A DNA stretch of 64,000 bases from contig CATNEN010000012.1 of the NCBI GenBank assembly GCA_950097015.1, positions 2,852,001 to 2,916,000 on the forward strand. The letters run 5' to 3'. Shown here piece after piece: positions 14,385 to 51,400 of the stretch. The first letter of the stretch is position 1. Each line of letters starts with the position of its first letter. The notes under the pieces are model-generated. The model worked only from the letters and a program-made list of their open reading frames with translations, had not been told where the DNA came from and made no database searches. Position numbers and translations under genes: made by a program. Source of the stretch: Macrostomum hystrix. Taxonomy: Eukaryota > Animalia > Platyhelminthes.

Positions 14385-16017
14385 TCAGTGCTCGGCTACA
14401 TCGGCATCGGCTTCGGCCACTTCTCCGTCTTCGTCGTTGTAGTCTTCGTTGTTGACTTCGCCATCCTCATCTGCGTCGTCAGCCGCGGCGGCTGCGTCCT
14501 CTTCCATGATGTCGTAGGGCTCCTGGCAGCGGAACTCGATGCTGTCCCGGCTGTCCAGGCTATTATCCGTGACGATGGAGTTGAGGATGGAGTTCAGGTC
14601 CGTCGCCAGTTCGCTGCCGAAGCAGGCGCCGGAGCGCCAGTGGGTCTTGAGGCCGCTGGCGCTGATGTACTTCTTGCAGCACTTCGGACACTCGAAGGGT
14701 CGCTCGTTGGTGTGCAGCCGCTTGTGCAGCTTCAAATGGACGAACTGGGTGAACTTGGCAGGGCAGATCTTGCAACTGAATGGCTTCTCGCCGCTGTGCA
14801 GTCGCATGTGGGTCTTCAAGTTGCTGGTGCTGCTGAACCGTTTGTGGCACACGTAGCAGGCGTGCGGCTTCTCGCCAGTGTGCACCAGGTTGTGCTTCTG
14901 CAGGTGGGCCAGCTGGGTGAAGCCCTTGTCGCACAGCTCGCATTTAAATGGCCTCTCGCCGGTGTGAGTGCGCAGGTGCACCTTCAGATTGGACAGCTGG
15001 CCGAAGCTCTTGAAGCAGACGTTGCACTCGTAGTGCATCTTGCCGTCCTTCTTGCGCAGCGGATAGGGCAGAGCGTGGCTGCCCCGACAGCCGCCGCCGC
15101 CTCCCGCTGAACTGTCCTCTGCGTTGGACGCAGAATCGCTAACAATCTCGCGGCGCCGTTGTCGGGGCCGACTGATGATCGGCGGGGACGACTCTTCGTG
15201 CTGTAGCTGCAGACCGGGAGGAGGCAGCGTCGGCGGAGCCCCAGACGATGCCGATGATGTGGACGCTGCGGCTCTTGGCGGACTGGACAGGACGGGGCGG
15301 CGGTGCGGGCTGTCGCCGTGCGCGGGAGGCGGTGGCAGATGCGGCGCTGGGATTGAATTCGCCAGCGAATGCGGCAACAGCGGCAGCGGCAGATGCGGAG
15401 GCGGCGGCGGCGGATGTGAAGGCGGACCCGGCGGCATCGGCGGCGCTTGCTGATTCGTTCGCGTCAAGCCGGTTGGCGTTGGAGGCGGCGGAAAGAACGG
15501 AAAGTTGAGGAGGCCCATGCTGGCGTACAGCTGGGACAGCAGCGGCAACGTCAGCGGCAGCGGCGGCCGCCCGCACGGGAACAGCGCCGCCGGGTCAGGG
15601 AAGTGCCTCGGCGGAAACTGAGGTGGTGGCGGCGGCGGCGGCGGCTGCGCAGGCTGCGGGTGTCCAGGCGGATGGCCGAACTCGCGGCAGTGCTCAGCCG
15701 CTGCCGCCGCCACTGCAGCTGCGGCAGTTGCCTGGAACAGCGGCGAATGTTGGCCTCCGAACATCGGCTGCTGCTGCTGATGCTGCTGATGATGATTTTG
15801 TGAATTCAACTCGCCGTATGGCCAGTTCAGCATGGCTTTGTGCGGTGGCAGGTGAGGCGGCATCGGCGGCCGCGGAAGTGACAGCGGAGATCTATGATGG
15901 TGCAGGGGGTGATGATACAGCGGCAGAGAAGAAGGCGCGAAGTTCGCTGCGGCAGCCGAAAGTGCCGATGCTAAGCTCGGATCGTTCGTCAGACGTTCTA
16001 TTGAGAATGGCAGTGCC

Positions 16018-16050
<33 letters not shown>

Positions 16051-19000
16051 GGCTCCTGCTTGATGCTGCTGGCTTGTTGTTGCTGTTTTGTTGCAAGTCT
16101 GTCAGCTCGTTGACCATGCGAGTCTGCTGAATGGATAAATCGATACAAAATTCTCATTTGTGCATTGCAGTCGCATTGTCTCTACTTTAACAAAGACCAG
16201 GTAATAAAATCCGGTTTAGCCCCGTCTCTGCTTTGTTATTCTACTCAAACGGATAGGGGGAATCCAGCTGAGCTTTATCTCAAATATGAAATCATCCGTA
16301 CCCCCCGTCCGCCGCCTCCGCCTCGGTGTTATCTGATGCAGACGGCTGTCTCATCTCGGAACAATGGGATCCGATAGGAGGGAAGTTTACAAAAGAAGGG
16401 GCCGTTTTGCAAAGAACCGAAGATTCTGCGTGATTCTGCGATGTTCAATTTTTGTTATCCCTATACTATTGATCCCTATCTAAGTTATCCCAACCAAAGT
16501 TATTCCAAATGTGAGTTATCCTTATCAAGCAATCCCTCTGTGATAATTCGCAGTCGAATCCCAAATCCTCACCCTCCAGGTTCAGGCGTCGCGCGTCGGA
16601 GTTCAGCAGCAGCTGCAGATCGGCGCCGTACCAGGCCACCAGCTCCATGTCGCAGGCCACAGTGTCGATGGTGTAAAAGTACAAGTCATCGCCGCGCATG
16701 GAGGCCACCAAATTGTAGTCTGTGGGCGATTGGCGCACGCAGGCCAACCAGTTGCACCGTCTCGGTGAGGTCACGTCGTAGTAGCTGACGTCACCCGACC
16801 CCGGACTGTACTGCTGCTGCTGAGGTGAGCTGCCTGACCGGAGTACCCTCCAGCACCTGTCCGTAGCAACCGTTACTATGGGCGCTTTCAGCGGACCGAA
16901 TCTGGTGCCTTTAGGAATTGCGTCGCGACTCCAAACAGTTGCGGCCTGAGGATTTAGAGGACAAAGAATTTTTTTTGGTTTTTTACCTCGTAGTTACTGA
17001 ATTCTACTGATCGGTCTGCCCGCATCCGCATATACCCTGGTCTCCGAGGATATTACACAATATCCTATTCTCAACTAAATGCGCCTAGTAACTGGGCAAA
17101 ATATTAGAATGCGTGCAAATAAGGAATGCTGATTTATGTTCGATGCCACCAAAAATCTGTTCCGACATTGCTGCGAAGCAGCTAATGTTAAGTGGCCCAC
17201 AAGCACTGAACCGGATGAGCACACGGATGCTCACGGAATGGCAGCAAAATGCGTGACAAGGCAGTGAGAGAAAGCATCACCGATGGGGCACAATGACCAT
17301 AGCTTTTTTAGTAGACTGGTGGGACTAATTTTTGGGATATTTCATCTCATCTTCTCATCCCACTCATTCTTCCTCACTAGCTTCCCGTTTTCTCCCCTCG
17401 GGTTGCTCGCCACTCCAGCCTCGCACTTCCTCCCTCATCTTGCTGTCCCCAAAAATTAATCCCCAATAAACTGAATCAACCCCGGGATTGGGATAATATC
17501 CCACAGCATCATCTGTCACACATCCCCCACCCCGATTGAGTCCACCTTTTTCTCCCCAATAATTTTTGCCTTTCACCTTGACGAGCGAGCTGGCCCCGCA
17601 CGCACTCGGCACTTGAACTTTTAATTAGGATTCGTAACTTTGATTGCGGAATCTAGACTAGCCAAAATTAGTCCCATATATTACGAAATCCCTTCAGGTT
17701 TCGGATAATTATCCAAGTAAAGGCTCGAAATTTTGACACATCCGCCAGTTTTCAACTATTTAGGAGGAACAGTAGAGTGTGATATTGGCCCCGCATTTCT
17801 GTTTGTTTGTGTGTGTTTCCTAGAATCTATCGCTATAACCGTGTTTTGATTGTGCAACCGCAGGATGACGTACTCTTTGTTCAACAGTTTGGCCCCCGAT
17901 TCAATATTGAACAATAAAAATTCCGGAGGCCAATATTAAATCAACGGTTATAGAACTGTAAGACCGTTGGAGTTCAACTTTGATTTCCCAAGCTAAAGGT
18001 CAGTGTTTTCATTTCTCACAGGTATAGCCAGCCCAGACCATCGCCTTATTGGTTATAGAGAAAATTCATTTTAACAGAGGTCAGGAATCTTTAGGGGCTT
18101 ATTTAAATTCATTGCTTTCGGGTGTGTGTGCGAGTGAGTGTTACGAGGGCTATACTAGGTGCCACTAAGCAAACAGAACCAAACCCGGCCCACTTTACTC
18201 ATCATATTAGTGTTTATTCTCTTCTTTCGCTGCCGAGAAGAACAGAAAACACAGCAACGATTTTCTTAGAGGCTGAAACTAAAATCTCATTCAGACAGCA
18301 GTGAAAGCAGTGGCAAAGCGAGAGCTGCTTCTAGGCTTTGAGCACACTGCTGCCAATCCGTTTGAGATTGGTCTCTTAGTGAGATTTTTCTCCTAGAAAA
18401 AGTAACAATAAGTGAGTCGAAGTTGATTGCCTACTCAAATTTGCACAAAAGCTTCTAGTAGCAGCAGCAAATTGGCACAAAGATTTTTCGAACTTGGGCG
18501 CTAAGGCTTCTCAAAGGTTGAGCATACAATGCTTTAGCCTAAGCCCCTGTCTCTAAGCACACACTAGCTAGTTAGGTGTGAGTGTGCAAGTGTTTCGAGC
18601 TGAGCTATCCATTGACTGACAGTGTCTATAAAATAGGTGTGGAAATGAATTTTTGGAATAGCATTTTCACTGTTCGCAGTTACTGCGAGTAAATCATGCG
18701 CTAGGATGCATGCAGTGCTTGAGAAAGAAACTACAGAAGCAAAATGTTGATAGACCTAGCTCATAAAAGGGATCCATCCATACGATGAAAGCTGGGAAGA
18801 AAATTGGTTTTATAAACTAAACAGCAGAAAATTGAGATCCTTGAAGCTGACGAGGATAGATGGAATTGAAGGCTAAAATGAAAAGCCAACTATTGACAAG
18901 TCTTCTGCCCGCCACCTACCCCCGCTGTCCTAGGTCATTTAATCTGCTCCAACGGTTCAAGTATAATGGGCAAACTGGCTTCAACTCTAAACTGTACCCG

Positions 19001-36510: not shown

Positions 36511-37234
36511 TATCTATTCATCAAGTAGACTATATAGCTACACTATTTTATAAGAAAATCAACTTTCTACATTGACACCGAGAAATTTGTCAAAGCAATC
36601 TACTTTTAGGCACCCATATACGACTAAGTCTACTGTGAGTAGCAGATTGTAGGCTTGTGTTAATAATTTATCTTAAAATGCATTAATTATCTAAAGAAGA
36701 AGACAGTCGATGGTTTGCAAAGTTTAAAGAATGAGCAGCAGAATCTTATTGTTGACTGAAATTCGGAATTAAAGTTTCCGAAAATTACAGACTCCACTCC
36801 CGGCCTTCCTGTTTTGGCACTGTACACCCGAGCAGTCATCGTACACTGAAAGCGCTCAAATTGAATGTACATTCACGACCCCCCACGCGGTTGAATGTAC
36901 GCATGAGCAAAGGAAAATGGGGTTGTTGGTGGAGAGAGGATGGATTTTTCTCTCCCGTGCCGCCGTCCCGGCCAAGGCCGTGCTCGCCTTGGCTTTAATA
37001 GTATGGCATCTACTGTTCCATTTATAGCTTTACATTCCTTCCTAGGTTTAGTTAGAATAAAGAAATGGTCTCAATATTTAGTTCAACCATTATCTTCCCT
37101 TAGCGCATAGGGTTAGTGAGCGCTGCATTGCCTTAGAAGACATAAAATAGACTAATGAGTGTCAGAGGTTAAAGCAAATCTGAGCCATTGAAAGTAGATT
37201 GAAAGTAGCCTGCAGGCAACAATCCAAGAAGAAC

Positions 37235-40200
37235 ATGACGACAACCAGGGCTAGAAAGGCCACACCGGCGTCTAAGGAGTTGAAAATTTTGCACTTTAAC
37301 GATGTCTACAACATAGAATCAGCCGGACACATCGGCGGCGCGGCTAGATTTGTCACAGCGCTGAGGTCGTACTCAACCGATGTGCAACCCTTGGTGCTAT
37401 TCTCTGGCGACGTGTTCAGCCCGTCCACCATTAGCACTGTTACACGCGGCCAGCACCTAGTTCAGGTGTTGAAAGCATGCAAAATTGACGCCGCCTGTTT
37501 TGGCAATCACGACTTCGACTTCGGCGTAGACAATCTGGTTCAGTGCAGCCAGGCCACGGGTTTTCCCTGGCTCCTGTCCAACATTATCGACAGGGAGACA
37601 GGGGCACCCCTAGCCGACGGCAAGGAGAGCGTCTGCATCGACCACGCGGCCTCCGGACTGCGCGTCGGCATCATCGGCTTGGTGGAGATGGAATGGGTCG
37701 ACACCCTGTCCACAGTGGACCCGGAGGACATTCGATTCTTTGACTTCTGTACTAGAGGCGACCAGCTCGCCAGCAAGTTGAAGTCTGAGCAGGGCTGCGA
37801 CCTGGTGCTGGCGCTGACTCACATGCGCTGGCCCAACGACAGGAAGCTGGCTAGAGCTACCAAACACATCGATATCATACTCGGTAAGGGCGAGACAGAG
37901 ACAGCGCTAATCTATTACTTATTAGATGACGAGGCTTTCAACTATAAGAACAAGGCTATATTTACTCCCGCTGTTTGTCTAAGGGCCTGTGAAATGACTA
38001 GCACTCGTTTCTGAAGCGCAAGTCAAAAGTTTGTTTTTATACATTTTCTATTTGTAGAGTTATCTTTCCATAATAGTCCCCCCTATAGTTCTCAATGTGG
38101 AGAGTTATCCACCTATTATCTTTGTTAATTGGGAGAATTATCCTCCTTTAATATTCCCGATTGGGAGAATTATCCTCCTTTAATATTCCCAATTGGGAGA
38201 ATTATCCTCCTTTAATATTCCCGATTGGGAGAATTATCCTCCTTTAATATTCCCGATTGGGAGAATTATCCTCCTTTAATATTCCCAATTGGGAGAATTA
38301 TCCTCCTTTAATATTCCCGATTGGGAGAATTATCCTCCTTTAATATTCCCAATTGGGAGAATTATCCTCCTTTAATATTCCCAATTGGGAGAATTATCCT
38401 CATTTAATATTCCCAATTGGGAGAATTATCCTCCTTTAATATTCCCAATTGGGAGAATTATCCTCATTTAATATTCCCAATTGGGAGAATTATCCTCCTT
38501 TAATATTCCCAATTGGGAGAATTATCCTCCTAATATTCTCAACTGGTAGAATCATCATCGTTTACTATTCTCAATAGGGAGAATTATCCTTATTTAATAT
38601 TCCCAATTGGGAGAATTATCCTGCTTTTAATATTCCCAATCGGGAGAATTATCCTCCTAATATTCTCAACTGGTAGAATCATCATCGTTTACTATTCTCA
38701 ATCAGGAGAATTATCCTCATTTAATATTCCCGATTTGGATAATTATCCTCCTTTGATATTCCCGATTGGGAGAATTTCCCATATCCCTATTTTGCAGAAT
38801 TAGATTCTCCTGTCAAATACCCAATCATTGGAATTATCCTACAATCATATATTCTCCATTAGGATAAATATCCTCCTATATATAATACCCTGAGCATTGC
38901 ACCCAATATCCTAATAAAAAACCGACCCAGGCGGACACGATCACAACTACGGCATCGAGTTCATCAACAATCGAGCCATAGTTAAAAGCGGTACAGATTT
39001 TCGTCAGTTCAGCGCCATCACCCTCACAATAGCCGCCGGCGCGCCGATGGAAGTCAAGATTGAAACTGTCGATGTGGACGCTACCCGGTTCAGCGAGGAC
39101 CCCGATGTGGCCAAAGCTGTCGAGGTGCTTAACTGGCTGTTTGGCCACAGTAACATTTTCTAGCCCTTTTCCACTTCTGCCTTACCTGTCCTCGGCTGTC
39201 TGTTCTTAACTGTCTCTCTTTACCTGTCTCTCGTCACCTGTATCTCGTCACCTGTCCGTTCTTATCTGTCTGTTTTTACCTGCCTGTTCTCACCTATCTG
39301 TTCTCACCTGTCTGTTATCGCCTGTCTGATCTCACCTATCTGTTCTCGCCTGTCTATTCTCGCCTGTCTGTTATCGCCTGTCTGTTATCGCCTGTCTGTT
39401 ATTGCCCGTCTGTTCTCACCTGTCTGTTCTCGCCTGTCTGTTCTCGCATGTCTGTTCTCGCCTGTCTGGTATCGCCTGTCTGTTCTCACCTGTCTGTTCC
39501 CGCCTGTCGGGTATCGCCTGTCTGTTCTCGCCTGTCTGTTCTCACCTGTCTTTTCTCGCCTGTCTGTTCTCGCCTGTCGGGTATCGCCTGTCTGTTCTCG
39601 CCTGTCGGGTATCGCCTGTCTGTTCTCTCATTTCCGTCCTCGCTCTCACCTGTCGTGTTCACTTATCCGTGCCGACTGAAAGTGACTCTGCTGCCCCTTT
39701 TCTCGACCCTGTCCCATAGAGCCACGTTGAGAACCTGGAGAAGAGCATGAAGCGAGTGCTGGGCCAGATCGACTGTCCCATGGAGTGCCGCTTCGATCAC
39801 ATTCGCACTCAGGAGACCAACCTGGGCAACTTCATGTGTGACATTGTGCTCACTGCTCTGCAAGCGGACTTTGTACTGGTGAACTCGGGCTCGTTCAGGG
39901 CCGACTGCATCATACCGGCTGGCGACTTCCGGCTGGGCGACCTCAGCCGACTGTTTCCTATGCTGGATCCGCTGGTTGTGCTGGGCATCGACGGCCGCAC
40001 CCTGCTGGCCGCGCTGGAAAATGGAGTCTCTATGTGGCCCGCACTGGAGGGACGCTTTCCACAGGTTCGTTTCCACCCCTTCATCATCCGCCCTTTCATC
40101 ATCCGCCCTTCATCATCCACCCCTTCATCATCCGCCCCTTCATCATCCGCCCTTCATCAGCCGCCCCTTCATCATCCGCCCTTCATCATCCGCCCTTCAA

Positions 40201-41147
40201 CATCCGCCTCTTCATCATCCACCCTTCATCATCCGCCCTTCATCATCCGCCCTTCATCATCCGCCCCTTCATCATCCGCCCTTCATCATCCGCCCTTCAT
40301 CATCCGCCCTTTCATCGTCCGCCCCTTAATCATCCGCCCCTTCATCATCCGCCCATTCATTATGCGCCACTACATCATCCGCCCCCTTCATTATCCACCC
40401 CTTCATTATCCGCCCCTTCATTATCCATCGCTTTATTTGCCGCCCTCCATCATCCACCCCTTCATCATTCGCTCCGGCATCATCCGCCGCTTCATTACCC
40501 GCCCCTTCATCATTCACTCCTTCATCATCCGCCTCATCCTCATGCGCCCAATCACGCAGGTGTCGGGCCTGCGTTTCCGCTTTGATGGCTCGCGCCCGCC
40601 TGGCAACCGGGTCGACCCGGCCAGCGTGCGCATTGGCGACCGGACATTGGTCCTCGACGCCCAGTATCGCATGGCAACTAAATACTATCTATTCTGCGGC
40701 CGCGACGGCTACGACATGCTGCCCAGCTGCCAACTCCTAGTCGACGACGAGGACGGGCCGGTGTGGAGTGTGGCGGTGCAGAACTATTTCACAGCCAGCG
40801 GGGTGCTCCGCGGCTGGCTTAGGCTGAAGAATCAGCACAGGTGCCGGCTCAGGCCAATGAGCCGCCGCCGGTCCTGCGTGGCCGAGCCGGAGGAACCGGA
40901 GATGCCGCCAGCTTCAAAGCGGCCGCGTAGAAGCAAAAATTCGAAAGATAATTGGGACACTGTGCGTCGCGAGTTCGCGCCCTGCTCAACAAAAGAGGAG
41001 GCGGCTTTTGCAGCGCCAAGGCCAACGGTTGAGGGCCGCATTGTCGAGACATCGGCGCTGGCAGCTGCGACTGCCGAGGCAGCGACCGAGACGGATAAGG
41101 GAGGGGAGACAGCGGAAGGAGTGGTCGAAGGGGATAAATTAGATTGA
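37235..41147 (+). CDS. 5'-nucleotidase/apyrase-family metallophosphoesterase, ~591 aa. Exons 37235-37883, 38931-39124, 39720-40064, 40560-41147
   Basis: Motifs ILHFNDVY, FSGDVFSPS, GNHDFDFG, LTHMRW and IILG|GHDH (spliced, phase 1). The C-terminal 5'-nucleotidase domain contains RTQETNLGNF..NSGSFRAD..LENGVS..EGRFPQ|VSGLRFRFD..MATKYYLFCGRDGYDML. All three introns are GT-AG with compatible phases. Confidence 0.92.
38127..38777. repeat. 32-bp intronic minisatellite (TTGGGAGAATTATCCTCCTTTAATATTCCCAA)
   Basis: Tandem units in intron 1 of the nucleotidase, decaying at the right end. Confidence 0.94.
39215..39625. repeat. 14-bp intronic minisatellite (TCGCCTGTCTGTTC)
   Basis: Tandem units in nucleotidase intron 2. 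Confidence 0.93.
40072..40545. repeat. ~15-bp intronic minisatellite (CTTCATCATCCGCCC)
   Basis: Degenerate tandem units filling nucleotidase intron 3. Confidence 0.92.
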
Positions 41148-41201: not shown

Positions 41202-41805
41202 GTTGCAATTCAGGTGAGATTTGAGTTGCAATTCAGGGGAGATTTGAGTTGCAATTCAGGGGAGATTTGAGTTGCAATTCAGGGGAGATTTGAGTTGCAA
41301 TTCAGGTGAGATTTGAGATTTAATTCGGGTGTGATTTGAGATCTAATTCGGGTGTGATTTGAGATCTAATTCGGGTGTGATTTGAGATCTAATTCGGGTG
41401 AGATTTGAGATCTAATTCGGGTGTGATTTGAGATCTAATTCGGGTGAGATTTGAGATCTAATTCGTGTGTGATTTGAGATCTAATTCAGATGAGATTTGA
41501 GATCTAATTCGGGTGTGATTTGAGATCTAATTCAGATGAGATTGGAGATCTAATTCGGGTGTGATTTGAGATCTAATTCGGGTGAGATTTGAGATCTAAT
41601 TCGGGTGAGATTTGAGATCTAATTCGGGTGAGATTTGAGATCTAATTCGGGTGTGATTTGAGATCTAATTCGGGTGAGATTTGAGATCTAATTCGGGTGA
41701 GATTTGAGATCTAATTCGGGTGAGATTTGAGATCTAATTCGGGTGAGATTTGAGATCTAATTCGGGGGAGATTTGAGATATAATTCAGATGAGATTTGAG
41801 ATCTA
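41202..41805. repeat. 23-bp compound minisatellite (GTTGCAATTCAGGGGAGATTTGA, then TCTAATTCGGGTGAGATTTGAGA)
   Basis: About 5 units of type 1 followed by about 21 units of type 2, just 3' of the nucleotidase stop. Confidence 0.95.
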
Positions 41806-42262: not shown

Positions 42263-43742
42263 GCCTTCCCTAATGTCAACCTTCCCTAATGTCCGCCTTT
42301 CCTAATTCTCTCTTCCCTAATGTCAACCTTCCCTAATGTCAACCTTCCCTAATGTCAACCTTCCCTAATGTCAACCTTCCCTAATGTCAACCTTCCCTAA
42401 TGTCAACCTTCCCTAATGTCAACCTTCCCTAATGTCAACCTTCCCTAATGTCCGCCTTCCCTAAAGTCAACCTTCCCTAATGTCAACCTTCCCTAATGTC
42501 AACCTTCCTTAATGTCAACCTTCCCGAATGTCCGCCTTCCCTAATTCTCTCTTCCCTAATGTCAACCTTCCCTAATGTCTTCCTTCCCTAATGTCAACCT
42601 TCCCTAATGTCAACCTTCCCTAATGTCTTCCTTCCCTAATGTCAACCTTCCCTAATGTCAACCTTTCCTAATGTCTATCTTCCCTAATGTCCGCCTTCCC
42701 TAAAGTCAACCTTCCCTAATGTCAACCTTCCCTAATGTCCGCCTTCCCTAATGTCAACCTTCCCTAGTGTCAACCTTCCCTAATGTCAACCTTCCCTAAT
42801 GTCAACCTTCCCTAATGTCAACCTTCCCTAGTGTCAACCTTCCCTAATGTCAACCTTCCCTAGTGTCAACCTTCCCTAATGTCCGCCTTCCCTAATGTCA
42901 ACCTTCCCTAATGTCAACCTTCCCTAGTGTCAACCTTCCCTAATGTCAACCTTCCCTAGTGTCAACCTTCCCTAATGTCCGCCTTCCCTAATGTCAACCT
43001 TCCCTAATGTCCGCCTTCCCTAATGTCAACCTTCCCTAATGTCCGCCTTCCCTAATGTCAACCTTCCCTAATGTCTATCTTCCCTAATGTCAACCTTCCC
43101 TAATGTCAACCTTCCCTAGTGTCAACCTTCCCTAGTGTCAACCTTCCCTAATGTCAACCTTCCCTAATGTCCGCCTTCCCTAATGTCAACCTTCCCTAAT
43201 GTCCGCCTTCCCTAATGTCAACCTTCCCTAATGTCAACCTTCCCTAGTGTCAACCTTCCCTAATGTCAACCTTCCCTAGTGTCAACCTTCCCTAATGTCC
43301 GCCTTCCCTAATGTCAACCTTCCCTAATGTCAACCTTCCCTAGTGTCAACCTTCCCTAATGTCAACCTTCCCTAATGTCAACCTTCCCTAATGTCCGCCT
43401 TCCCTAATGTCAACCTTCCCTAATGTCAACCTTCCCTAGTGTCAACCTTCCCTAGTGTCAACCTTCCCTAATGTCAACCTTCCCTAATGTCCGCCTTCCC
43501 TAATGTCAACCTTCCCTAATGTCCGCCTTCCCTAATGTCAACCTTCCCTAATGTCTATCTTCCCTAATGTCAACCTTCCCTAATGTCTACCTTCCCTAAT
43601 GTCTACCTTCCCTAATGTCTACCTTCCCTAATGTCTACCTTCCCTAATGTCAACCTTCCCTAATGTCTACCTTCCCTAATGTCTAACTTCCTTTGTGTAT
43701 TGTGTCCGCCTTTCCTAATACTCTCTTCCCTAATGTCTATCT
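42263..43742. repeat. 16-bp minisatellite (CTTCCCTAATGTCAAC), ~90 copies
   Basis: Direct tandem units with TCCGC/TCTAC/TAGTG variants. Confidence 0.97.
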
Positions 43743-44205: not shown

Positions 44206-47185
44206 ATGCCGCTCCGCCAGCCGTTGGATTTGCGCACAGGTCTGCACCGAGTGCGGGCCAGGTATCCGTCCACCTGGGCCATCCTGGGCCGCAAGCTGCA
44301 GCAGGCCGAGGCCTGGCAGTGGCTGGTGCAGGACTACGTCGACTCCGACGGACGACATCTGTCGGCCGACCAGTCGCAGGGCATTAGCGGAGCCGCGGAT
44401 GCTCTGCTACTGTGGGAGCGCGGATGCAATCTTGGCGACTTGCTTGAGGTGCTACATAGTCGGCAACTCTTCGACGCGGAGGGTTTTCTGCGATCCAATC
44501 TCCTCAATCAGACCGATTTTCTGCCACCGCAACCTGCGCCGCCTCCGCCACCTCCGCCGCCTCCTCCTCCGCCTCAACCAACTGCGCCGCCGCCTCAGCC
44601 AATCATCGAAGACTCGGCTGTTCTCGAGTTCCGAGCTGAGGAGCTTCAGAGTGCACTCACAGTCGGCAGGTGGATTGGAACCGGCGGATTCGCTGATGTC
44701 TACCTAGCTCCGATCGCCACGGATAACGGTAGACAGGTGGGTCACGCCGTGAAGGTCTACCGGCCAGACATCGGTGACAACGTGCGTCGGGCCATTCTTA
44801 AATCGATCAACGCAATGAGCCGACTGAGGCACCATTGCATTGCGGCTCTGGTTGGCTACAGCTTCGCGTCAGAGAATAGCCGGATGTACACAGTGTTCGA
44901 GCACTACCCCAACGGCGATCTCCGTCGCCTTCTAGAACGTTTCGCCGACCTCGACAACTGGTTGTCGTCGGCTGACGCGGCGGCAAGTCGATTCCACCTG
45001 GGCGGGACGCGGCTGCGCATGGCAACGGAGATTGCGTCGGCGATCAAGTTTCTGCACTCGGCGGAGGACTTTTCTCTAGCAGCGAACGGCCAGGATTATC
45101 TGGCATTCCGATTCGTGCACAAGGATGTGAAGCCCAGCAACATCCTGCTGGACGGCCATTGGCGCTGCCGACTTGCCGACTTGGACTTTCTGGACCTGAC
45201 AACCAGCGGCTGCGGCGAGACGATTCATGGCGAACAGAGAATGGAACATGTGAGCCAGTTGCTCATTGGTGCATGCCTTCAATGACTTTTAGCACTGATT
45301 TCTCCCCTATCTCATCTCTCCCGTGTCTCATCTCTCCCGTATCTCATCTCTCCCGTGTCTCATCTCTCCCGTGTCTCATCTCTCCCGTGACTCATATCTC
45401 CCGTGTCTCATCTCTCCCGTGTCTCATCTCTCCCGTGTCTCATCTCTCCCGTGTCTCATCTCTCCCGTGTCTCATCTCTCCCGTGTCTCATATCTCCCGT
45501 GTCTCATCTCTCCCGTGTCTCATCTCTCCCGTGTCTCATCTCTCCCGTGTCTCATCTCTCCCGTGTCTCATCTCTCCCGTGTCTCATCTCTCCCGTGTCT
45601 CATCTCTCCCGTGTCTCATCTCTCCCGTGTCTCATCTCTCCCGTGTCTCATCAGGTGGAGCGGGTGCACACCCTGGGCTATCGGCCGCCAGAGGATCGAG
45701 TCACCTGCAAGTGGGACGTATTCAGTGCCGGCGTCACCCTCCTGGAGCTGTTCACGGGCCTGTCTGGCCAGCCGCTCAGTAGGGACCAGCCCGCCGAGTC
45801 CTGGCTGTGCCGAGCCCTAGCAGCGGGTCAGCGAGGCCCGCCTCCGCCGCAGCCGGGACTGCGCCTGTCGCCCGGTCTGCACGCCAGAGTCTGCCACGAA
45901 GCCCTAGCACCATGCCTGCTGGAAGACTTCAGCGCACGATGTACAGCGGCTGACCTACTGCTCAGACTGGAGCACCTGCTGACCGACGCCAGGGCCGAAG
46001 ACGACGCCAACGAGAACAGCGACGACGTCGCCTGGCTGGAAGAGTTCGACTGGGCACAGTTGGACGCCGCGATTCGTCAGGCCCGCCAGCCAATCGGAGC
46101 CGGGGGCTTCGGCAGCGTGTACAGAGTCAGTTTGCCAGGCAGGCAGGTGGCGGTCAAGCGGCTGCTGCCAAATTCAGCCACGGATTTCCCGCTGGAGTCG
46201 CTTCAACGGCAGGCGGGCCTGCGGCACCCGCGGCTTCTGCAGCTGCTGGGCTTCGCCCAGGGCCCGAGCCTCCTGCTGGTCTACGAGCTGTGCGAGGCAG
46301 GCAACCTGCGCAGCCTCATTGACGCCTTCCAGGCTGGACGGGCGCCGTCGGCCTGCGAATTCCAGCTGGCTGGAGTTCGAATCCGGATGGCGCAAGAGTT
46401 GGCTAGCGCCGTGGCCTACCTGCACAGCCGGATGGAGCCGGAGTTGGCGGCAGGCGGCGACTTTCGCTACTATGGCCTGGCGCACCAGGATGTCAAGAGC
46501 AGCAACGTACTGCTCACTGCCGACTGGCACTGCAAGCTGGGCGACCTGGACACCATTCAGGTACACACGCACATCCTGTGCGCCTCATCAGAAATTATCC
46601 CATCCAATCAGAAACACTCCATCCAATCAGAAACACTCCATCCAATCAGAAAACACCCCATCCAATCAGAAACACTCCATCCAATCAGAAAACACCCCCA
46701 TCCAATCAGAAACACTCCATCCAATCAGAAACACTCCATCCAATCAGAAAACCATAATTCGCTTCAAGAACTTCTCATTCCAGGTCGCCACGCCGGGCGC
46801 AGGCGTCACTCGGCCGGAGCAACGGCCCAGTTGCACGCAGGCGGGCAGCTGTCGTTATGTCACACCCGGATATCACGTGCCAGGCGAGGCCTGGTCCTGC
46901 AAGGTGGATGTGTACGCCCTTGGTGTCACTCTGCTGGAGTTGTTTACTGGCCTTCCAGCCTCGGCTGGCGACACTGAGCTGCGGCTGAGCCTAGTCGGGT
47001 CGCCGCCGCCTTCGCAGGCCGGCCTCCTAATCAGCGACGGCTGCTATCGGGACCTGCTCGTCAGCGTGTTCGAGCCCTGCCTCAACCTGGACCCGGTCAG
47101 GCGGCCGGACTCTGCCGCGGTGCTGCGGGAGCTGGATAGACTGTACCGCTGCTGCGGCCCTGTTGAGGAGCTGGACTCAATGTGA
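44206..47185 (+). CDS. Death-domain protein with two tandem IRAK/Pelle-like kinase domains, ~783 aa. Exons 44206-45249, 45655-46560, 46784-47185
   Basis: The N-terminal helical segment (..ADALLLWERGCNLGDLLEVLHSRQLFDAEGFL) resembles Pelle/IRAK4 death domains and is followed by a poly-Pro linker. Kinase 1: IGTGGFADVY, HAVKV, HKDVKPSNILLD, LADLD, TLGYRPPE, WDVFSAGVTLLELFTG. Kinase 2: IGAGGFGSVY, VAVKRL, HQDVKSSNVLL, LGDLD, VDVYALGVTLLELFTG. Both introns are phase-0 GT-AG. The upstream polypyrimidine/CAG could alternatively be an acceptor for a further 5' exon. Confidence 0.87.
45308..45652. repeat. 16-bp intronic minisatellite (TCTCCCGTGTCTCATC)
   Basis: Tandem units running directly into the AG acceptor at 45653-45654. 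Confidence 0.95.
46598..46750. repeat. 19-bp intronic minisatellite (CCATCCAATCAGAAACACT)
   Basis: About 8 units in kinase intron 2. Confidence 0.92.
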
Positions 47186-47314
47186 TGTCCGTGTTCGAGC
47201 CCTGCCTCAACCTGGACCCGGTCAGGCGGCCGGACTCTGCCGCGGTGCTGCGGGAGCTGGATAGACTGTACCGCTGCTGCGGCCCTGTTGAGGAGCTGGA
47301 CTCAATGTGATGTC
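47065..47314 (+). repeat. Perfect 125-bp tandem duplication spanning the kinase stop codon
   Basis: 47065-47189 is identical to 47190-47314. Confidence 0.93.
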
Positions 47315-47319
47315 TGATT

Positions 47320-47325
47320 AATAAA
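47320..47325 (+). promoter_or_regulatory. Polyadenylation signal AATAAA of the tandem-kinase gene
   Basis: AATAAA immediately after the duplicated 3' end, followed by AT-rich DNA. Confidence 0.55.
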
Positions 47326-47582
47326 TGAATATTATATTACTATATAATTGCTTAGTAACTACAATCGCCATTACTAATTCCTGTAAAGGAATAAAAATGT
47401 TCTAGCAATATATACATACTTCACAATTTAAGTCTTGCACTATTTTAAGAGCCTTAAAAGTTGCAACCCGAAATAGTATTGCTTCTTATTAATGAGGGAC
47501 ACTTTTTTAAAACATGCGCTTTTTCCAACTCAAAGTAAAAACACAGTTCTAAGCACCACATCGTTTTGCCTTTCTTTGCCTT

Positions 47583-48214
47583 TAGTCGATTCCTCAGCCG
47601 CATTCAGTCGATTCCTCAGCCCCATTCAGTCGATTCCTCAGCCGCATTCAATCGATTCCGCAGCCCCGTTCAGTCGATTCCTCAGACCTCATTCAGTCGA
47701 TTCCTCAGACCTCATTCAGTCGATTCCTCAGACCTCATTCAGTCGATTCCTCAGCCCCATTCAGTCGATTCCTCAGACCTCATTCAGTCGATTCCTCAGA
47801 CCTCATTCAGTCGATTCCTCAGACCTCATTCAGTCGATTCCTCAGACCTCATTCAGTCGATTCCTCAGACCTCATTCAGTCGATTCCTCAGACCCCATTC
47901 AATCGATTCCTCAGCCCCATTCAGTCGATTCCGCAGCCGCGTTCAGTCGATTCCTCAGACCTCATTCAGTCGATTCCTCAGACCTCATTCAGTCGATTCC
48001 TCAGACCTCATTCAGTCGATTCCTCAGCCCCGTTCAGTCGATTCCTCAGACCTCATTCAGTCGATTCCTCAGACCTCATTCAGTCGATTCCTCAGACCTC
48101 ATTCAGTCGATTCCTCAGACCTCATTCAGTCGATTCCTCAGACCTCATTCAGTCGATTCCTCAGACCTCATTCAGTCGATTCCTCAGACCTCATTCAGTC
48201 GATTCCTCAGACCC
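47583..48214. repeat. 23-bp minisatellite (TTCAGTCGATTCCTCAGACCTCA)
   Basis: About 27 units between two convergent genes. Confidence 0.96.
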
Positions 48215-48426
48215 CATTAATTAAAAATTAAGTTTCAATGAAAATGGATTTGTCTGTAACAATGCCACGCATAAGGAGTATAGTTTAGAATGCGTCAATG
48301 TATTAAATAAACGGTTCACAATAACAATTTTAACAATAAACTATACTCTACCTCGCATTAACGAAGTTCTGACCAACCGTTTCAATAAACAAATAGAAAT
48401 CAATGCGATAAAATCGTTTATCGTGG

Positions 48427-51400
48427 CTAAAACTGATCAAATTCTTCGCTAAACTGATCAAACTGGTCGCAGCCAATGTCCTCATAATGGACCTCCGTCT
48501 CCTGGTAAATTGAGATTTCTCGACTTGGGCGGTATTCCGGTTGACAAGAACGATTAAACAGGCTGTAAAAGCTGCGATGAAAAAGTACAAAGAGATCGAT
48601 ATTTTACAGGTTCACAATCTGTTTAAATTGGTTAACAGGATAGAGAATAATACTAGTCAACATCAGAGCTCATAGCAACACTGGCTGCTCATAGCAACAC
48701 TGACTGCTCATAGCAAAACTTTCTGCTCATAGCAACACTGACTGCTCATAGCAAAACTGGCTGCTCATAGCAACACTGGCTGCTCATAGCAACACTGACT
48801 GAGAGCTCATTGCAACACAAACTGCTCATAGCAACACTGACTGAGAGCTCATTGCAACACAAACTGCTCATAGCAACACTGACTGCTCAAAGCAACACAA
48901 ACTGCTCATGGCAACACTGACTGCTCAAAGCAACACAAACTGCTCATAGCAACACTGACTGCTCAAAGCAACACAAACTGCTCATAGCAACACTGACTGC
49001 TCAAAGCAACACAAACTGCTCATAGCAACACTGACTGCTCAAAGCAACACAAACTGCTCATAGCAACACTGACTGCTCAAAGCAACACAAACTGCTCATG
49101 GCAACACTGACTGCTCGAAGCAACACTGACTGCTCATAGCAACACTGACTACTCATAGCAACACTGACTCATAGCAACACTGACTAATAGCAACACTAAC
49201 TACTCAAAGCAAGGCTGACTGCATCAGAGCTCATAGCAACACTGACTGCTCATAGCAACACTGACTACTCATAGCAACACTGACTAATAGCAACACTGAC
49301 TACTCAAAGCAAGGCTGACTGCATCAGAGCTCATAGCAACACTGACTGCTCATAGCAACACAGACTACTCAAAGCAAGGCTGACTGCATCAAAGCTCATA
49401 GCAACACTAGACAATACTCTAGCATTAGAGCACTTCGAGTGTCTTAATGACTCACCAGATATTTAAAAAGAAAATGTGATTGCGGAGCTCATTGACTCCT
49501 GCTCGGCCGCAGCCAAGGCGCTGGCCAGGTTGGACATTGGTCAGTCCGCTGATGACCTCGGTCAGATGCTGAAGCTGCCGATCGCCTGTCGTTCTCGAGT
49601 TTTTCTGCTGCTGCTGCTGTTGCTGCAGTTGCATGAGCTGCCTTTCCGCTTTACCTAACTTGATGGCCCTCCGTTTGAGCTCCTGCGAATAGCGAATGAG
49701 GCCAGCCCGGGACTGTCCAATGTTGTACATCGGCTGGCCTGTAGCCATTTCAAACATGAGCTGGCCCAGTGCCCAGTAGTCCACGGAGTTTGAATAGCCG
49801 CTGTACGGATGAAATCTAGCTGCAATTTCAAAATAATAGTCAATATCAAATCCAGTTCATTGTTTATTTGCAAAGACTGGCGCAATTTAAAGTGAAATTA
49901 CTGCAGCCCTCCATTGACTCATTGGAGGAGATGCGAAGCAGGCAGTGCAGCATCTCGGGCGCCATCACATCCGGGCAGCCAACCAGAGAATAGGCGCGAC
50001 CGTCTAGTGTTAGGGCGAGTAGGAGATTTTGAGAATAAGGTTAGAAAAACACTTAGGGACAGTACTTCAGGAACCATTGGGACAGTACTTCAGGAACCAT
50101 TGGGACAGTACTTCAGGAACCATTGGGACAGTACTTCCGGAACCATTGGGACAGTACTTCAGGAACCATTGGGACAGTACTTCAGGAACCATTGGGACAG
50201 TACTTCAGGAACCATTGGGACAGTACTTCAGGAACCATTGGGACAGTACTTCAGGAACCATTGGGACAGTACTTCAGGAACCATTGGGACAGTACTTCAG
50301 GAACCATTGGGACAGTACTTCAGGAACCATTGGGACAGTACTTCAGGACACATTGGGACAATGCCTCAGCACTGTACACAAGAATCTGCGACTGATTCAT
50401 CATTCTAGCTAGGTCACCTTGGAGCCGTTTGGCACAGCTGAGGTCAGTAAGGCACACGTAGCCGTTGTAGTCAAACTGAACATTTTCACTCCTGATGTCA
50501 CGATGCGCAATGCGCAAATTTTCCAGATACTCCAACGCCAGGACCAGCTGAGCAGACACGAATCGAATCTCCGACGCACTGAAACAGGATCCAATATTGA
50601 CGCCCGACTCGCCGAACTCCTTCGCCGAACGCGGCATGCTGAATTGGGAGCCTCCAGCAGCTTCTACCATCAGGCGCACTCGCATCGCAATGTGCTGACG
50701 CAGATTTCCAGCCCTGCTGTCCGGCTTCACAAAGTACAAATTGCAGTGGTCCTTGAAGCTGTCAATCAGGCGGCAGATGAACGGACAGCGCAAGGCCGTC
50801 TGCAGACGCTTGGCCTCCAGGAGGTTTCCGATGAGATTTACACCGGACCGTCGGCACTTTTCAACCAGGTGGGCCTAAGCGGCATTGGGATAAAGGAGTG
50901 TGAGATATCGATTCTGGCCTCATTCGAACCCTACCTCTGGCCTTATTCAGGTCCTACCTTAGGCCTTATTCAGGTCCTACCTTAGGCCTTATTCAGGTCC
51001 TGCCTCTGGCCTCATTCAGGTCCTACCTTAGGCCTCATTCAGGTCCTGCCTCTGGCCTCATTCAGGTCCTGCCTCAGGCCTCATTCAGGTCCTGCCTCTG
51101 GCCTCATTCAGGTCCTACCTCTGGCCTCATTCAGGTCCTGCCTCTGGCCTCATTCAGGTCCTGCCTCTGGCCTCATTCAGGTCCTACCTCTGGCCTCATT
51201 CAGGTCCTGCCTCTGGCCTCATTCAGGTCCTACTTCGGGACTTTGAAGAGTTCATAATGTCCTAACAATAACGGCAAGCGTTACCTTGCGTGCCACCTCC
51301 AATGTATATATCGGCAGATGTCTGCGCTCGCTCACGTCGTCGAGTTTTAAATTACCCGCGCCCACAGCCGCCGCCGTCGCCGCTTGTGTGGCGGCGATCA

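What the first reader, a model, noticed from the sequence alone, without database searches (positions are those of the whole stretch)
44206..47185. Death domain plus tandem IRAK/Pelle-like kinases with DLD motifs: a possible animal counterpart of plant tandem-kinase immune proteins
Canonical IRAK/Pelle proteins have a death domain and one kinase; here two kinases follow. Both keep the beta3 Lys, catalytic Asp/Asn and Mg-binding Asp. Both also share unusual changes: non-RD (HKD, HQD), DLD for DFG, and Ser at the alphaC-Glu position (SINAMSRLRH, SLQRQAGLRH). Each has a phase-0 intron in the activation segment and a GVTLLELFTG alphaF. This implies internal duplication of an already atypical kinase. 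Kinase 2 also lacks the APE Glu (GYHVPG). Tandem RLK/Pelle-family kinases such as barley Rpg1 and wheat Yr15/WTK1 are known immune proteins in plants. I know of no characterised animal death-domain tandem-IRAK architecture, so this is a candidate new innate-immune or cell-death signalling module. The function is inference.
Basis: partly seen in the sequence, partly recalled or inferred. Interest (0 to 1): 0.8.

Follow-up and report, generated by a model that had tools for sequence, protein, structure and literature searches.

The report
Flatworm death-domain protein with two IRAK-like kinases
A Macrostomum flatworm expresses one gene that joins an IRAK4/Pelle-type death domain to two IRAK-like kinase domains made by an internal duplication. 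I found this layout in no other organism, and its role in a phylum reported to lack Toll-like receptors is untested.

Summary
Window 44206-47185 (+) is a three-exon gene with GT..AG, phase-0 introns, encoding 783 aa. The order is an N-terminal six-helix domain, a poly-proline linker, then two protein kinase domains.

- **Kinases:** Pfam finds both (E 1e-14 to 1e-17). Their nearest relatives are plant RLK/Pelle kinases and IRAK4.
- **Death domain:** Pfam misses it. An AlphaFold model (pLDDT 83) matches IRAK4, Tube and Pelle death domains best (Z 11.7-8.7, other death-fold domains 8.0 or less).
- **One transcript:** intron-less contigs from two public runs join exon 2 to exon 3, and exon 2 alone spans the junction between the kinases.
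- **Conservation:** a 64-70% identical copy in Macrostomum lignano (GenBank PAA94098.1, truncated "hypothetical protein") keeps all three domains. dN/dS is 0.18-0.29.
- **Duplication:** K1 and K2 form a 100/99-supported clade and share DLD for DFG, Ser at the alphaC-Glu position, non-RD loops and an 11-12-residue insertion.
- **Distribution:** an exhaustive search of 1.84 billion proteins found no close relative outside Macrostomum.

The two introns are not at homologous positions, and intron 1 is absent in M. lignano. Kinase 2 keeps a Glu next to the APE position.

Immune or cell-death function, and any likeness to plant tandem kinases, remain inference. I rate it a new variant of the IRAK/Pelle kind, of moderate interest.

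The parts
44206..44520 (+). N-terminal death domain (aa 1-105), IRAK4/Pelle/Tube-like six-helix bundle
   Evidence: AF2 model has pLDDT 82.7 and pTM 0.72. Foldseek's top 8 hits are all IRAK4, Pelle or Tube death domains (E 0.014, TM 0.67-0.70). VIA Z is 11.7, 11.3 and 11.1, against 8.0 or less for other death-fold domains. The only PDB sequence hit is the IRAK-M death domain, E 0.52. ESM-atlas neighbours are all Death clusters. hhalign against an IRAK death-domain profile gives P 0.0014 over helices 4-6. Pfam Death gives no hit. dN/dS against M. lignano is 0.18.
44521..44625 (+). Proline-rich linker (aa 106-140, [26 protein letters not shown])
   Evidence: Read directly from the sequence. It lies between the death domain and the kinase, where IRAK1 has its ProST region (from my own knowledge). 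The M. lignano assembly changes frame within this linker.
44626..45249 (+). Kinase 1, N-lobe to early activation segment (aa 141-348), end of exon 1
   Evidence: Pfam PK_Tyr_Ser-Thr 2.2e-16 and Pkinase 3.8e-14. Aligns to the FLS2 kinase. Key residues: K183, S200 at the alphaC-Glu position, F231 gatekeeper, HKD307, N312, DLD 325-327.
45250..45654 (+). Intron 1 (phase 0, GT..AG), mostly a 16-bp minisatellite x22
   Evidence: Intron-less contigs start exon 2 exactly at 45655 (records 13 and 16). This intron is absent from the M. lignano copy.
45655..46020 (+). Kinase 1 C-lobe (aa 349-470), first part of exon 2
   Evidence: Second HMMER stretch to CERK1 covers GYRPPE...DVFSAGVTLLELFTG. Pfam gives 2 stretches in this exon.
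46021..46560 (+). Kinase 2, N-terminal extension and N-lobe to DLD (aa 471-650), rest of exon 2
   Evidence: Pfam Pkinase 6.7e-17. CERK1 alignment E 3e-15. Key residues: K516, S530, Y558 gatekeeper, HQD627, N632, DLD 645-647. One exon holds the end of K1 and the start of K2.
46561..46783 (+). Intron 2 (phase 0, GT..AG) with a 19-bp minisatellite
   Evidence: It is skipped exactly in contigs X2 record 13 and X5 record 20. An intron at the same place exists in M. lignano.
46784..47185 (+). Kinase 2 C-lobe and stop codon (aa 651-783)
   Evidence: Pfam Pkinase 1.1e-3 on this piece alone. It is 57% identical to M. lignano exon 3. Contains GYHVPGE and GVTLLELFTG.
47186..47314 (+). 3' UTR start: an exact second copy of a 125-bp unit that repeats the last 40 codons plus the stop
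   Evidence: TRF finds 2.0 copies at 100% identity over 47065-47314. The junction is present in contigs X2 record 15 and X5 record 22.

Best explanation
This is a real, expressed, single gene of a Macrostomum flatworm. It encodes a cytoplasmic signalling protein with an IRAK4/Pelle-type death domain, a proline-rich linker and two tandem kinase domains of the IRAK / RLK-Pelle family.

**Shown**
- The two kinases come from an internal duplication that predates the split between this species and M. lignano.
- Both kinases keep the beta3 Lys, the catalytic Asp and Asn, and the metal-binding Asp.
- Both also share an atypical core: non-RD loop, DLD for DFG, Ser for the alphaC Glu, and an 11-12-aa insertion before the catalytic loop.
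- All three domains are under purifying selection.

**Inferred mechanism**
- The death domain recruits the protein into a helical death-domain oligomer of the Myddosome or Pelle-Tube type, nucleated by an adaptor not yet identified.
- Clustering brings the non-RD kinases together. Such kinases do not need activation-loop priming.
- They then phosphorylate each other or downstream substrates. The second kinase acts as a second catalytic unit or as a regulator of the first.
- The upstream receptor cannot be a canonical Toll-like receptor, since these are reported absent from M. lignano and other flatworms.
For: **Gene model and motifs:**

**Two kinase domains:**. Nearest relatives are plant RLK/Pelle kinases and IRAK4, by sequence and by structure (IRAK4 kinase TM 0.73-0.80).

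**Death-domain fold:**

**Single transcript:** exon 2 is one open reading frame across the K1/K2 junction. Contig X2 record 13 (2322 nt) runs exon 3, then exon 2, then 1105 further nt. That length fits exon 1 (1044 nt) plus a short 5' UTR. X5 records 16 and 20 show the same joints. X1 holds the unspliced genomic form.

**M. lignano copy:** it has an uninterrupted K1-K2 reading frame and the same N-terminal domain upstream.

**Selection:** dN/dS is 0.18 for the death domain and 0.26-0.29 for the kinases, at dS 0.6-0.97.

**Duplication:** the K1+K2 clade has 100/99 support, with each K1 pair and K2 pair also starred.

**Toll-like receptors absent from M. lignano and other flatworms:** PMC8609888.
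Against: - Pfam's Death model does not match at E<=1. Sequence-level support for the death domain is weak: E 0.52 and hhalign probability 17%.
- The fold evidence rests on a model built from only two sequences. Helical bundles can reach Z of about 13 by chance, per the tool's own note.
- The runs with spliced contigs are not on record as RNA.
- Loss of the alphaC Glu and Gly-to-Asp in the DFG motif could mean that one or both domains are catalytically weak or dead.
- No partner, substrate or phenotype is known. No MyD88- or Tube-like adaptor was looked for in this genome.
- The predicted arrangement of the two kinases is unreliable (pTM 0.54).
- The M. lignano assembly has a frame change in the linker.
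Confidence: 0.65

Rival explanations
1. It is a scaffold with no catalytic role. Both domains are pseudokinases in practice, as IRAK2, IRAK3 and Drosophila Tube are non-catalytic members of death-domain complexes. The protein would only nucleate or regulate a death-domain signalling complex.
For: The alphaC Glu is replaced by Ser in both domains. DFG is DLD, so the conserved Gly is lost. Both are non-RD. K1 has an imperfect Gly-loop, GTGGFA. Pseudokinase scaffolds are common in the IRAK family (PMC13519141).
Against: The Lys, the catalytic Asp and Asn, and the metal-binding Asp are kept in both domains and in both species at dS of about 0.6-0.97. That is unexpected if catalysis or nucleotide binding did not matter. 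The usual Lys/Asp/Asp criterion classes both as kinases.
Confidence: 0.25
2. It is an animal analogue of plant tandem kinase proteins. One kinase would serve as a bait for pathogen effectors, and the other, together with the death domain, would trigger defence or cell death.
For: The layout is two RLK/Pelle-IRAK-type kinases in tandem. Non-RD kinases are linked to innate immune recognition (from my own knowledge: Dardick and Ronald 2006). The plant proteins work this way (PMC8761531; PMC6170490). A death-fold domain could provide the output. Flatworms are reported to lack Toll-like receptors, so other sensors are needed.
Against: There is no sign of diversifying selection: dN/dS is 0.26-0.29 in both kinases. 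The family is a single 50%-identity cluster, not an expanded or polymorphic one. Neither kinase has degenerated into an obvious decoy. The two-kinase layout arose independently of the plant proteins. No infection or expression data exist.
Confidence: 0.1
3. The N-terminal domain is not a death domain but an unrelated small helical bundle. The protein would then be simply a lineage-specific cytoplasmic tandem TKL kinase with an orphan N-terminus.
For: No Pfam Death hit. No word-search hit for the domain among proteins of 191-609 aa. hhalign probability is only 17%. Foldseek E-values are above 0.001. The tool warns about chance matches for helical bundles.
Against: Four partly independent tests point to death domains, and specifically to IRAK, Pelle or Tube. 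The sole PDB sequence hit is the IRAK-M death domain. Language-model neighbours are all Death clusters, led by a 'pelle family' cluster. Foldseek's top 8 and VIA's top 5 are IRAK4, Tube and Pelle death domains, standing about 3 Z above other death-fold domains. The domain sits N-terminal to an IRAK-type kinase, as in every IRAK.
Confidence: 0.12
4. It is an annotation or assembly artefact: two or three neighbouring genes, or a pseudogene, read together.
For: The public M. lignano model is truncated, and that assembly has a frame change in the linker. The library kind of the runs with spliced contigs is not on record.
Against: One exon spans the K1/K2 junction with no stop codon. Spliced contigs from two runs join the exons in frame. 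The same order is found in a second species. Purifying selection acts on all parts. A stop lies just upstream of the ATG, and conservation begins exactly at Met1.
Confidence: 0.04

Closest known systems
IRAK4 / Pelle (animal IRAK family, TKL group)
   Same: N-terminal death domain whose model is closest to IRAK4, Tube and Pelle death domains. A Pro-rich spacer follows, then a kinase whose nearest solved structures are IRAK4 and whose sequence sits in the IRAK / RLK-Pelle group. Both kinases have the N-terminal F-x-x-x-L extension before the Gly-loop. K2 has a Tyr gatekeeper.
   Different: There are two kinase domains instead of one. Both are non-RD with DLD for DFG and Ser for the alphaC Glu, and both carry an 11-12-aa insertion before the catalytic loop. 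K1 has a Phe gatekeeper. The kinases sit on a very long branch and group with neither the IRAK1 nor the IRAK4/Pelle clade. Pfam's Death model does not match. The host phylum is reported to lack Toll-like receptors.
Plant tandem kinase proteins (RPG1, WTK1/Yr15, WTK2, WTK3)
   Same: Two RLK/Pelle-IRAK-type kinase domains in one cytoplasmic protein. They arose by duplication, as proposed for RPG1 (PMC8761531). WTK2 likewise keeps two potentially active kinases.
   Different: This is an animal protein of independent origin. It carries a death domain that the plant proteins lack. Neither domain is a clear pseudokinase. There is no family expansion and no evidence of a role in immunity.
Janus kinases (JH2 pseudokinase - JH1 kinase)
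   Same: An animal protein with two adjacent kinase-fold domains. JAK and TYK2 two-domain structures are the top whole-model Foldseek hits.
   Different: The match reflects only the presence of two domains (rmsd 17-24 A). JAKs are tyrosine kinases with FERM-SH2 domains and no death domain, and JH2 is a pseudokinase of a different family.
RIPK1 and other kinases with a death domain (DAPK)
   Same: A kinase combined with a death domain for assembly into cell-death or inflammatory complexes.
   Different: In RIPK1 the death domain is C-terminal and there is one kinase. RIPK1's death domain is a weaker structural match (Z 7.9, against 11.7 for IRAK4).
Macrostomum kinase-prodomain caspase (PMC11463336; scan note s1-346763)
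   Same: Same genus. Kinase-like domains are fused to a cell-death module. The earlier scan note describes two tandem dead kinases in front of a caspase.
   Different: The output domain there is a caspase, not a death domain, and its kinases are reported as inactive. Whether they are relatives of K1/K2 was not tested here.

Membership tests
IRAK/Pelle family | N-terminal death domain | tested here: met
   Met at the fold level. The AF2 model (pLDDT 82.7) is closest to IRAK4, Tube and Pelle death domains (Foldseek TM 0.67-0.70, VIA Z 11.7-8.7). Sequence support is weak, and Pfam PF00531 gives no hit.
IRAK/Pelle family | Kinase domain belonging to the IRAK / RLK-Pelle group of TKL kinases | tested here: met
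   The best PDB sequence hits are CERK1, LYK, FLS2 and BRI1, then IRAK4. The best single-domain structural hits are IRAK4. The tree places K1+K2 inside the IRAK / RLK-Pelle set relative to two outgroup kinases, but unresolved within it.
IRAK/Pelle family | One kinase domain per protein | tested here: not met
   Two complete kinase domains lie in one reading frame and one transcript.
IRAK/Pelle family | Tyrosine gatekeeper (an IRAK hallmark, from my own knowledge) | tested here: inconclusive
   K2 has Y558, aligned to the Tyr of CERK1. K1 has F231. The same holds in M. lignano.
IRAK/Pelle family | Recruitment by a MyD88- or Tube-type adaptor downstream of Toll/IL-1 receptors | not testable with these tools
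   No genome-wide search of this animal was possible. Toll-like receptors are reported absent from M. lignano (PMC8609888).
Death domain (Pfam PF00531, death-fold superfamily) | Match to the family profile above its cut-off | tested here: not met
   No hit at E<=1. The same profile detects the IRAK death domains used as controls at 1e-5 to 1e-11.
Death domain (Pfam PF00531, death-fold superfamily) | Six-helix antiparallel bundle of about 90 residues | tested here: met
   Helices at 13-33 (broken at residue 20), 37-42, 54-58, 63-73, 76-85 and 89-99. All 30 matches at Z 4.9 or above are death, DED, PYD or CARD domains.
Active protein kinase (Lys / catalytic Asp / metal-binding Asp criterion) | beta3 Lys, catalytic-loop Asp and Asn, and the Asp of DFG are present | tested here: met
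   K183, D307, N312 and D325 in K1; K516, D627, N632 and D645 in K2. All are conserved in M. lignano.
Active protein kinase (Lys / catalytic Asp / metal-binding Asp criterion) | alphaC Glu that pairs with the beta3 Lys, and an intact DFG Gly | tested here: not met
   S200 and S530 align to the alphaC Glu of FLS2 and CERK1. Both domains have DLD. Actual activity is not testable here.
Plant tandem kinase proteins | Two kinase or pseudokinase domains of RLK/Pelle origin in tandem | tested here: met
   This is an architectural likeness only.
Plant tandem kinase proteins | Common descent with plant TKP lineages, and a role in pathogen resistance | tested here: not met
   K1 and K2 are each other's closest relatives and lie apart from all plant kinases sampled. 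Function was not tested.

The most novel reading that the evidence does not exclude
In a phylum reported to have lost Toll-like receptors, Macrostomum built a new innate-immune or cell-death switch. A death-domain-nucleated tandem IRAK would have one kinase sensing or regulating and the other signalling. That would be an independent animal invention of the logic used by plant tandem kinase resistance proteins. It might belong to a wider Macrostomum toolkit that fuses tandem kinase-like domains to death-pathway modules, such as the reported kinase-caspase.
Probability: 0.12. Interest if true: 0.8.

Novelty: new variant of a known kind. Interest (0 to 1): 0.5.

Why it matters
IRAK/Pelle kinases are the conserved relay between death-domain adaptors and NF-kB in animals. 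Their plant cousins include tandem-kinase resistance proteins.

An animal IRAK-type protein with a duplicated, atypical but conserved kinase pair raises two questions. What does the death domain dock to in a flatworm lineage reported to lack Toll-like receptors? Why are two non-RD, DLD-type kinases both kept?

Macrostomum lignano is a laboratory model with RNAi and transgenesis, so these questions can be tested directly. The result would bear on how innate signalling is rewired after receptor loss. It would also show whether tandem kinases are a recurrent solution in immunity. If the gene turns out to be a housekeeping oddity of one genus, its importance is modest.

Tried and rejected
- **Pfam on the N-terminal domain:** no Death hit.
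- **Word-index search with the death-domain region (aa 1-105):** nothing among proteins of 191-609 aa. Longer proteins were outside that search's length range.
- **Read laying on the whole gene:** As the tool advised, only 45600-47330 was laid.
- **Death domains in front of the best remote tandem-kinase hits:** the N-termini of 100 of the top 150 hits carry mostly malectin, LRR and lectin domains. Death was not among the 25 commonest families, but single-member families were not listed, so this is not exhaustive. The eight top hits scanned in full have none.
- **Literature searches** for an animal death-domain tandem-IRAK protein, a Macrostomum IRAK or MyD88, and flatworm kinomes found nothing relevant. 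The Reveguk et al. 2025 tandem-kinase paper is not held.
- **Shared intron as evidence of duplication:** rejected.
- **TRAF6-binding motifs:** one C-terminal match (PVEELD) is not conserved in M. lignano, so I treat it as chance.
- **Two-kinase AF2 model:** the inter-domain geometry is unreliable (pTM 0.54), and I drew no mechanism from it.
- **Full-length protein:** the spliced window protein has no reference, so it was never submitted to the search or fold tools. The pieces, the read-through ORF 45403-46974 and M. lignano P0118 were used instead.
Full report
**1. What is in the sequence**

The stretch 44206-47185 on the + strand is GC-rich coding sequence (59%, against about 42-45% around it). 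It is interrupted by two short blocks of minisatellite.
- Joining 44206-45249, 45655-46560 and 46784-47185 at canonical GT..AG sites, both in phase 0, gives an open frame of 783 codons.
- The ATG at 44206 is preceded within 36 nt by a stop in the same frame. Similarity to the Macrostomum lignano copy begins exactly at this Met.

**2. Organism and nearest relative**

The only close protein in 5.8 billion clusters is M. lignano PAA94098.1, BOX15_Mlig022961g1, a "hypothetical protein" of 564 aa with 70% identity over exon 2.
- It is a truncated model starting inside kinase 1. UniProt holds a 617-aa version, P0118.
- Its genomic locus, L001 (NIVC01000016.1), also encodes the N-terminal domain at 66% identity just upstream. 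A frame change inside the proline-rich linker separates it from the kinases and explains the truncated model.
- No identical protein exists in the collection, and dS to M. lignano is 0.6-0.97. The window therefore most likely comes from another Macrostomum species, or from an old paralogue. Earlier notes of this scan also call the genome a Macrostomum flatworm.

**3. One gene or several**

Three lines of evidence point to one gene.
- Exon 2 is a single open frame holding the C-lobe of kinase 1 and the N-lobe of kinase 2.
- In M. lignano, kinase 1 and kinase 2 up to the DLD motif are one uninterrupted ORF (L001 9782-11611).
- Public runs contain intron-less contigs.
  - X2 record 13 (2322 nt) maps as 47094-46781, then 46557-45655, and continues for 1105 nt beyond the laid stretch. 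That matches exon 1 (1044 nt) plus a short 5' UTR.
  - X5 record 20 makes the same intron-2 joint. X5 record 16 begins exon 2 exactly at 45655, with 415 nt lying elsewhere.
  - Run X1 carries the unspliced genomic form (record 2).

Caveats: the library kind of X2 and X5 is not on record. Even so, "two separate genes" is very unlikely.

**4. The kinases**

Pfam detects a kinase domain in exon 1 (2.2e-16), two stretches in exon 2 (6.7e-17) and the C-lobe in exon 3.
- *Family placement.* Against solved structures, the best sequence matches are the plant RLK/Pelle kinases CERK1, LYK3, FLS2 and BRI1, followed by IRAK4. A two-domain AlphaFold model of the M. lignano protein has pLDDT 72. Its best single-domain structural neighbours are IRAK4 kinase domains, at TM 0.73-0.80.
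- *alphaC position.* HMMER alignments confirm that the alphaC Glu column holds Ser in both domains, S200 and S530.
- *Shared insertion.* Both domains carry an 11-12-residue insertion between helix E and the catalytic loop.
- *Catalytic residues.* Both keep the beta3 Lys (K183, K516), the catalytic Asp and Asn (D307/N312, D627/N632) and the metal-binding Asp (D325, D645).
- *Atypical features.* Both are non-RD (HKD, HQD) and have DLD for DFG.
- *Conservation.* All of these states are identical in the M. lignano copy.
The motif is GYHVPGE, with Glu at the next position, and M. lignano has GYFVPGE.
- *Gatekeeper.* K2 has the Tyr typical of IRAK/RLK kinases, and K1 has Phe.

**5. Internal duplication**

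K1 and K2 are 37% identical, against 67-70% between species for the same domain.
- In a maximum-likelihood tree with animal IRAK1-like and IRAK4/Pelle-like kinases, plant RLKs and RLCKs and two outgroups, K1 and K2 form a clade with 100/99 support. The two K1s and the two K2s pair inside it.
- The duplication is therefore older than the split of the two copies. It is specific to this lineage as far as sampled.
- The clade sits on a long branch (1.63), and its position within the IRAK / RLK-Pelle polytomy is unresolved. Long-branch attraction cannot be fully excluded, but the shared insertion and motifs argue independently for common origin.
- The identical GVTLLELFTG decapeptides differ at 6 of 30 nucleotides. 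They reflect constraint, not recent gene conversion.
- The intron argument fails. The two introns lie 18 alignment columns apart, and intron 1 is absent from M. lignano.

**6. The N-terminal domain**

Sequence-level evidence is weak.
- Pfam's Death model gives no hit at E<=1. The same model finds the death domains of nine control IRAKs at 1e-5 to 1e-11.
- A word-based search found no relatives of 191-609 aa.
- The single PDB sequence hit out of 177,635 sequences is the IRAK-M death domain, at E 0.52.
- hhalign against a profile of 15 IRAK death domains aligns helices 4-6 with P 0.0014 but a probability of only 17%.
- Language-model neighbours are all Death-domain clusters, led by a "pelle family" cluster at score 0.89.

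Fold-level evidence is stronger.
- An AlphaFold model from the two-sequence alignment is confident (pLDDT 82.7, pTM 0.72) and forms a six-helix bundle.
- Foldseek's eight best PDB matches are all IRAK4, Pelle or Tube death domains (E 0.014, TM 0.67-0.70).
- VIA-align gives Z 11.7 (IRAK4 2a9i, rmsd 2.6 A over 92 residues), 11.3 (Tube), 11.1 (IRAK4 in the Myddosome) and 8.7 (Pelle). Other death, DED, PYD and CARD domains score 8.0 or less.

I accept a death domain of the IRAK4/Pelle/Tube type with roughly 85% confidence. It is the most conserved part of the protein (dN/dS 0.18).

**7. Distribution**

An exhaustive phmmer search of 1.84 billion representatives with the M. lignano tandem kinase drops from 1284 bits (its own cluster) to 140 bits.
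- The next hits are multi-kinase proteins, mostly plant receptor kinases and protist proteins. Their N-termini carry malectin, LRR and lectin domains. None of the eight scanned in full has a death domain.
- The DLD motif at the DFG position occurs only in the Macrostomum proteins among the roughly 390 proteins fetched.
- The family thus appears confined to Macrostomum and is not expanded: one 50%-identity cluster, whose 90% cluster has five near-identical members.

**8. Context and mechanism**

Toll-like receptors were reported absent from M. lignano and other flatworm genomes (PMC8609888).

By analogy with IRAK4, IRAK2 and Pelle, the likeliest mechanism is as follows.
- The death domain is recruited into a helical oligomer.
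- Proximity then drives signalling by the kinases.
- Non-RD kinases do not depend on activation-loop phosphorylation. The two conserved catalytic cores suggest that both bind nucleotide.

All of this is inference. The adaptor, the receptor and the output are unknown. A pure scaffold role, as for IRAK2, IRAK3 and Tube, is the main rival.

The plant tandem-kinase analogy (PMC8761531, PMC6170490) rests on architecture only. I found no sign of decoy-like degeneration, diversifying selection or family expansion.

An M. lignano caspase with a kinase-like prodomain has been published (PMC11463336). An earlier scan note describes a tandem pseudokinase-caspase in this genome. Whether those kinase-like domains are relatives of K1/K2 is an open and testable lead.

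**9. Verdict**

This is a new variant of the IRAK/Pelle kind: a death domain followed by an internally duplicated, atypical kinase pair. It is real, expressed and conserved within a flatworm genus, and its function is untested. I score interest at 0.5.

Noticed in passing
window 47065-47314: An exact 125-bp tandem duplication (2.0 copies, 100% identity) repeats the last 40 codons, the stop and 4 further nt. The 3' UTR therefore begins with a second silent copy of the C-terminus. The junction between copies is present in the spliced contigs of two runs.
   Followed up: partly
window 45250-45654 (intron 1) versus L001 9782-11611: Intron 1 is about 87% one 16-bp minisatellite (22 copies). It is absent from the M. 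lignano copy, where kinase 1 is uninterrupted, so this is an intron gain or loss. Arrays of the same 16-mer are extremely abundant in the DNA contigs (word depth about 1.6e7 in X1).
   Followed up: partly
L001 9689-9713: The M. lignano assembly changes reading frame inside the proline-rich linker between the death domain and kinase 1. This explains the truncated GenBank and UniProt models. Whether it is a sequencing error or a real lesion is not resolved.
   Followed up: no
L001 11248-11592: In M. lignano, intron 2 begins with an 11-copy 32-bp minisatellite. Its unit contains the exon-2 end plus the GT donor (CTGCAG|GTGTGT), so the donor site is repeated many times.
   Followed up: no
window 47159-47176 (aa 776-781): The C-terminal PVEELD fits the TRAF6-binding consensus P-x-E-x-x-(acidic/aromatic). 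It is not conserved in the M. lignano protein and is probably chance.
   Followed up: yes
window 42264-43691, 47584-48218, 41207-41805, 48668-49387, 50056-50360, 50913-51231: The gene is flanked on both sides by long minisatellite arrays of 16-23-bp units, up to 89 copies. Such arrays fill much of the intergenic and intronic space in this window.
   Followed up: no
window 37199-41147 (+) and 14385-16157 (-): Neighbouring ORFs are a 5'-nucleotidase-type gene (a Metallophos domain and a 5_nucleotid_C domain, with an internal 15-bp repeat giving an extensin-like Pro-rich stretch) and a 590-aa C2H2 zinc-finger protein.
   Followed up: partly
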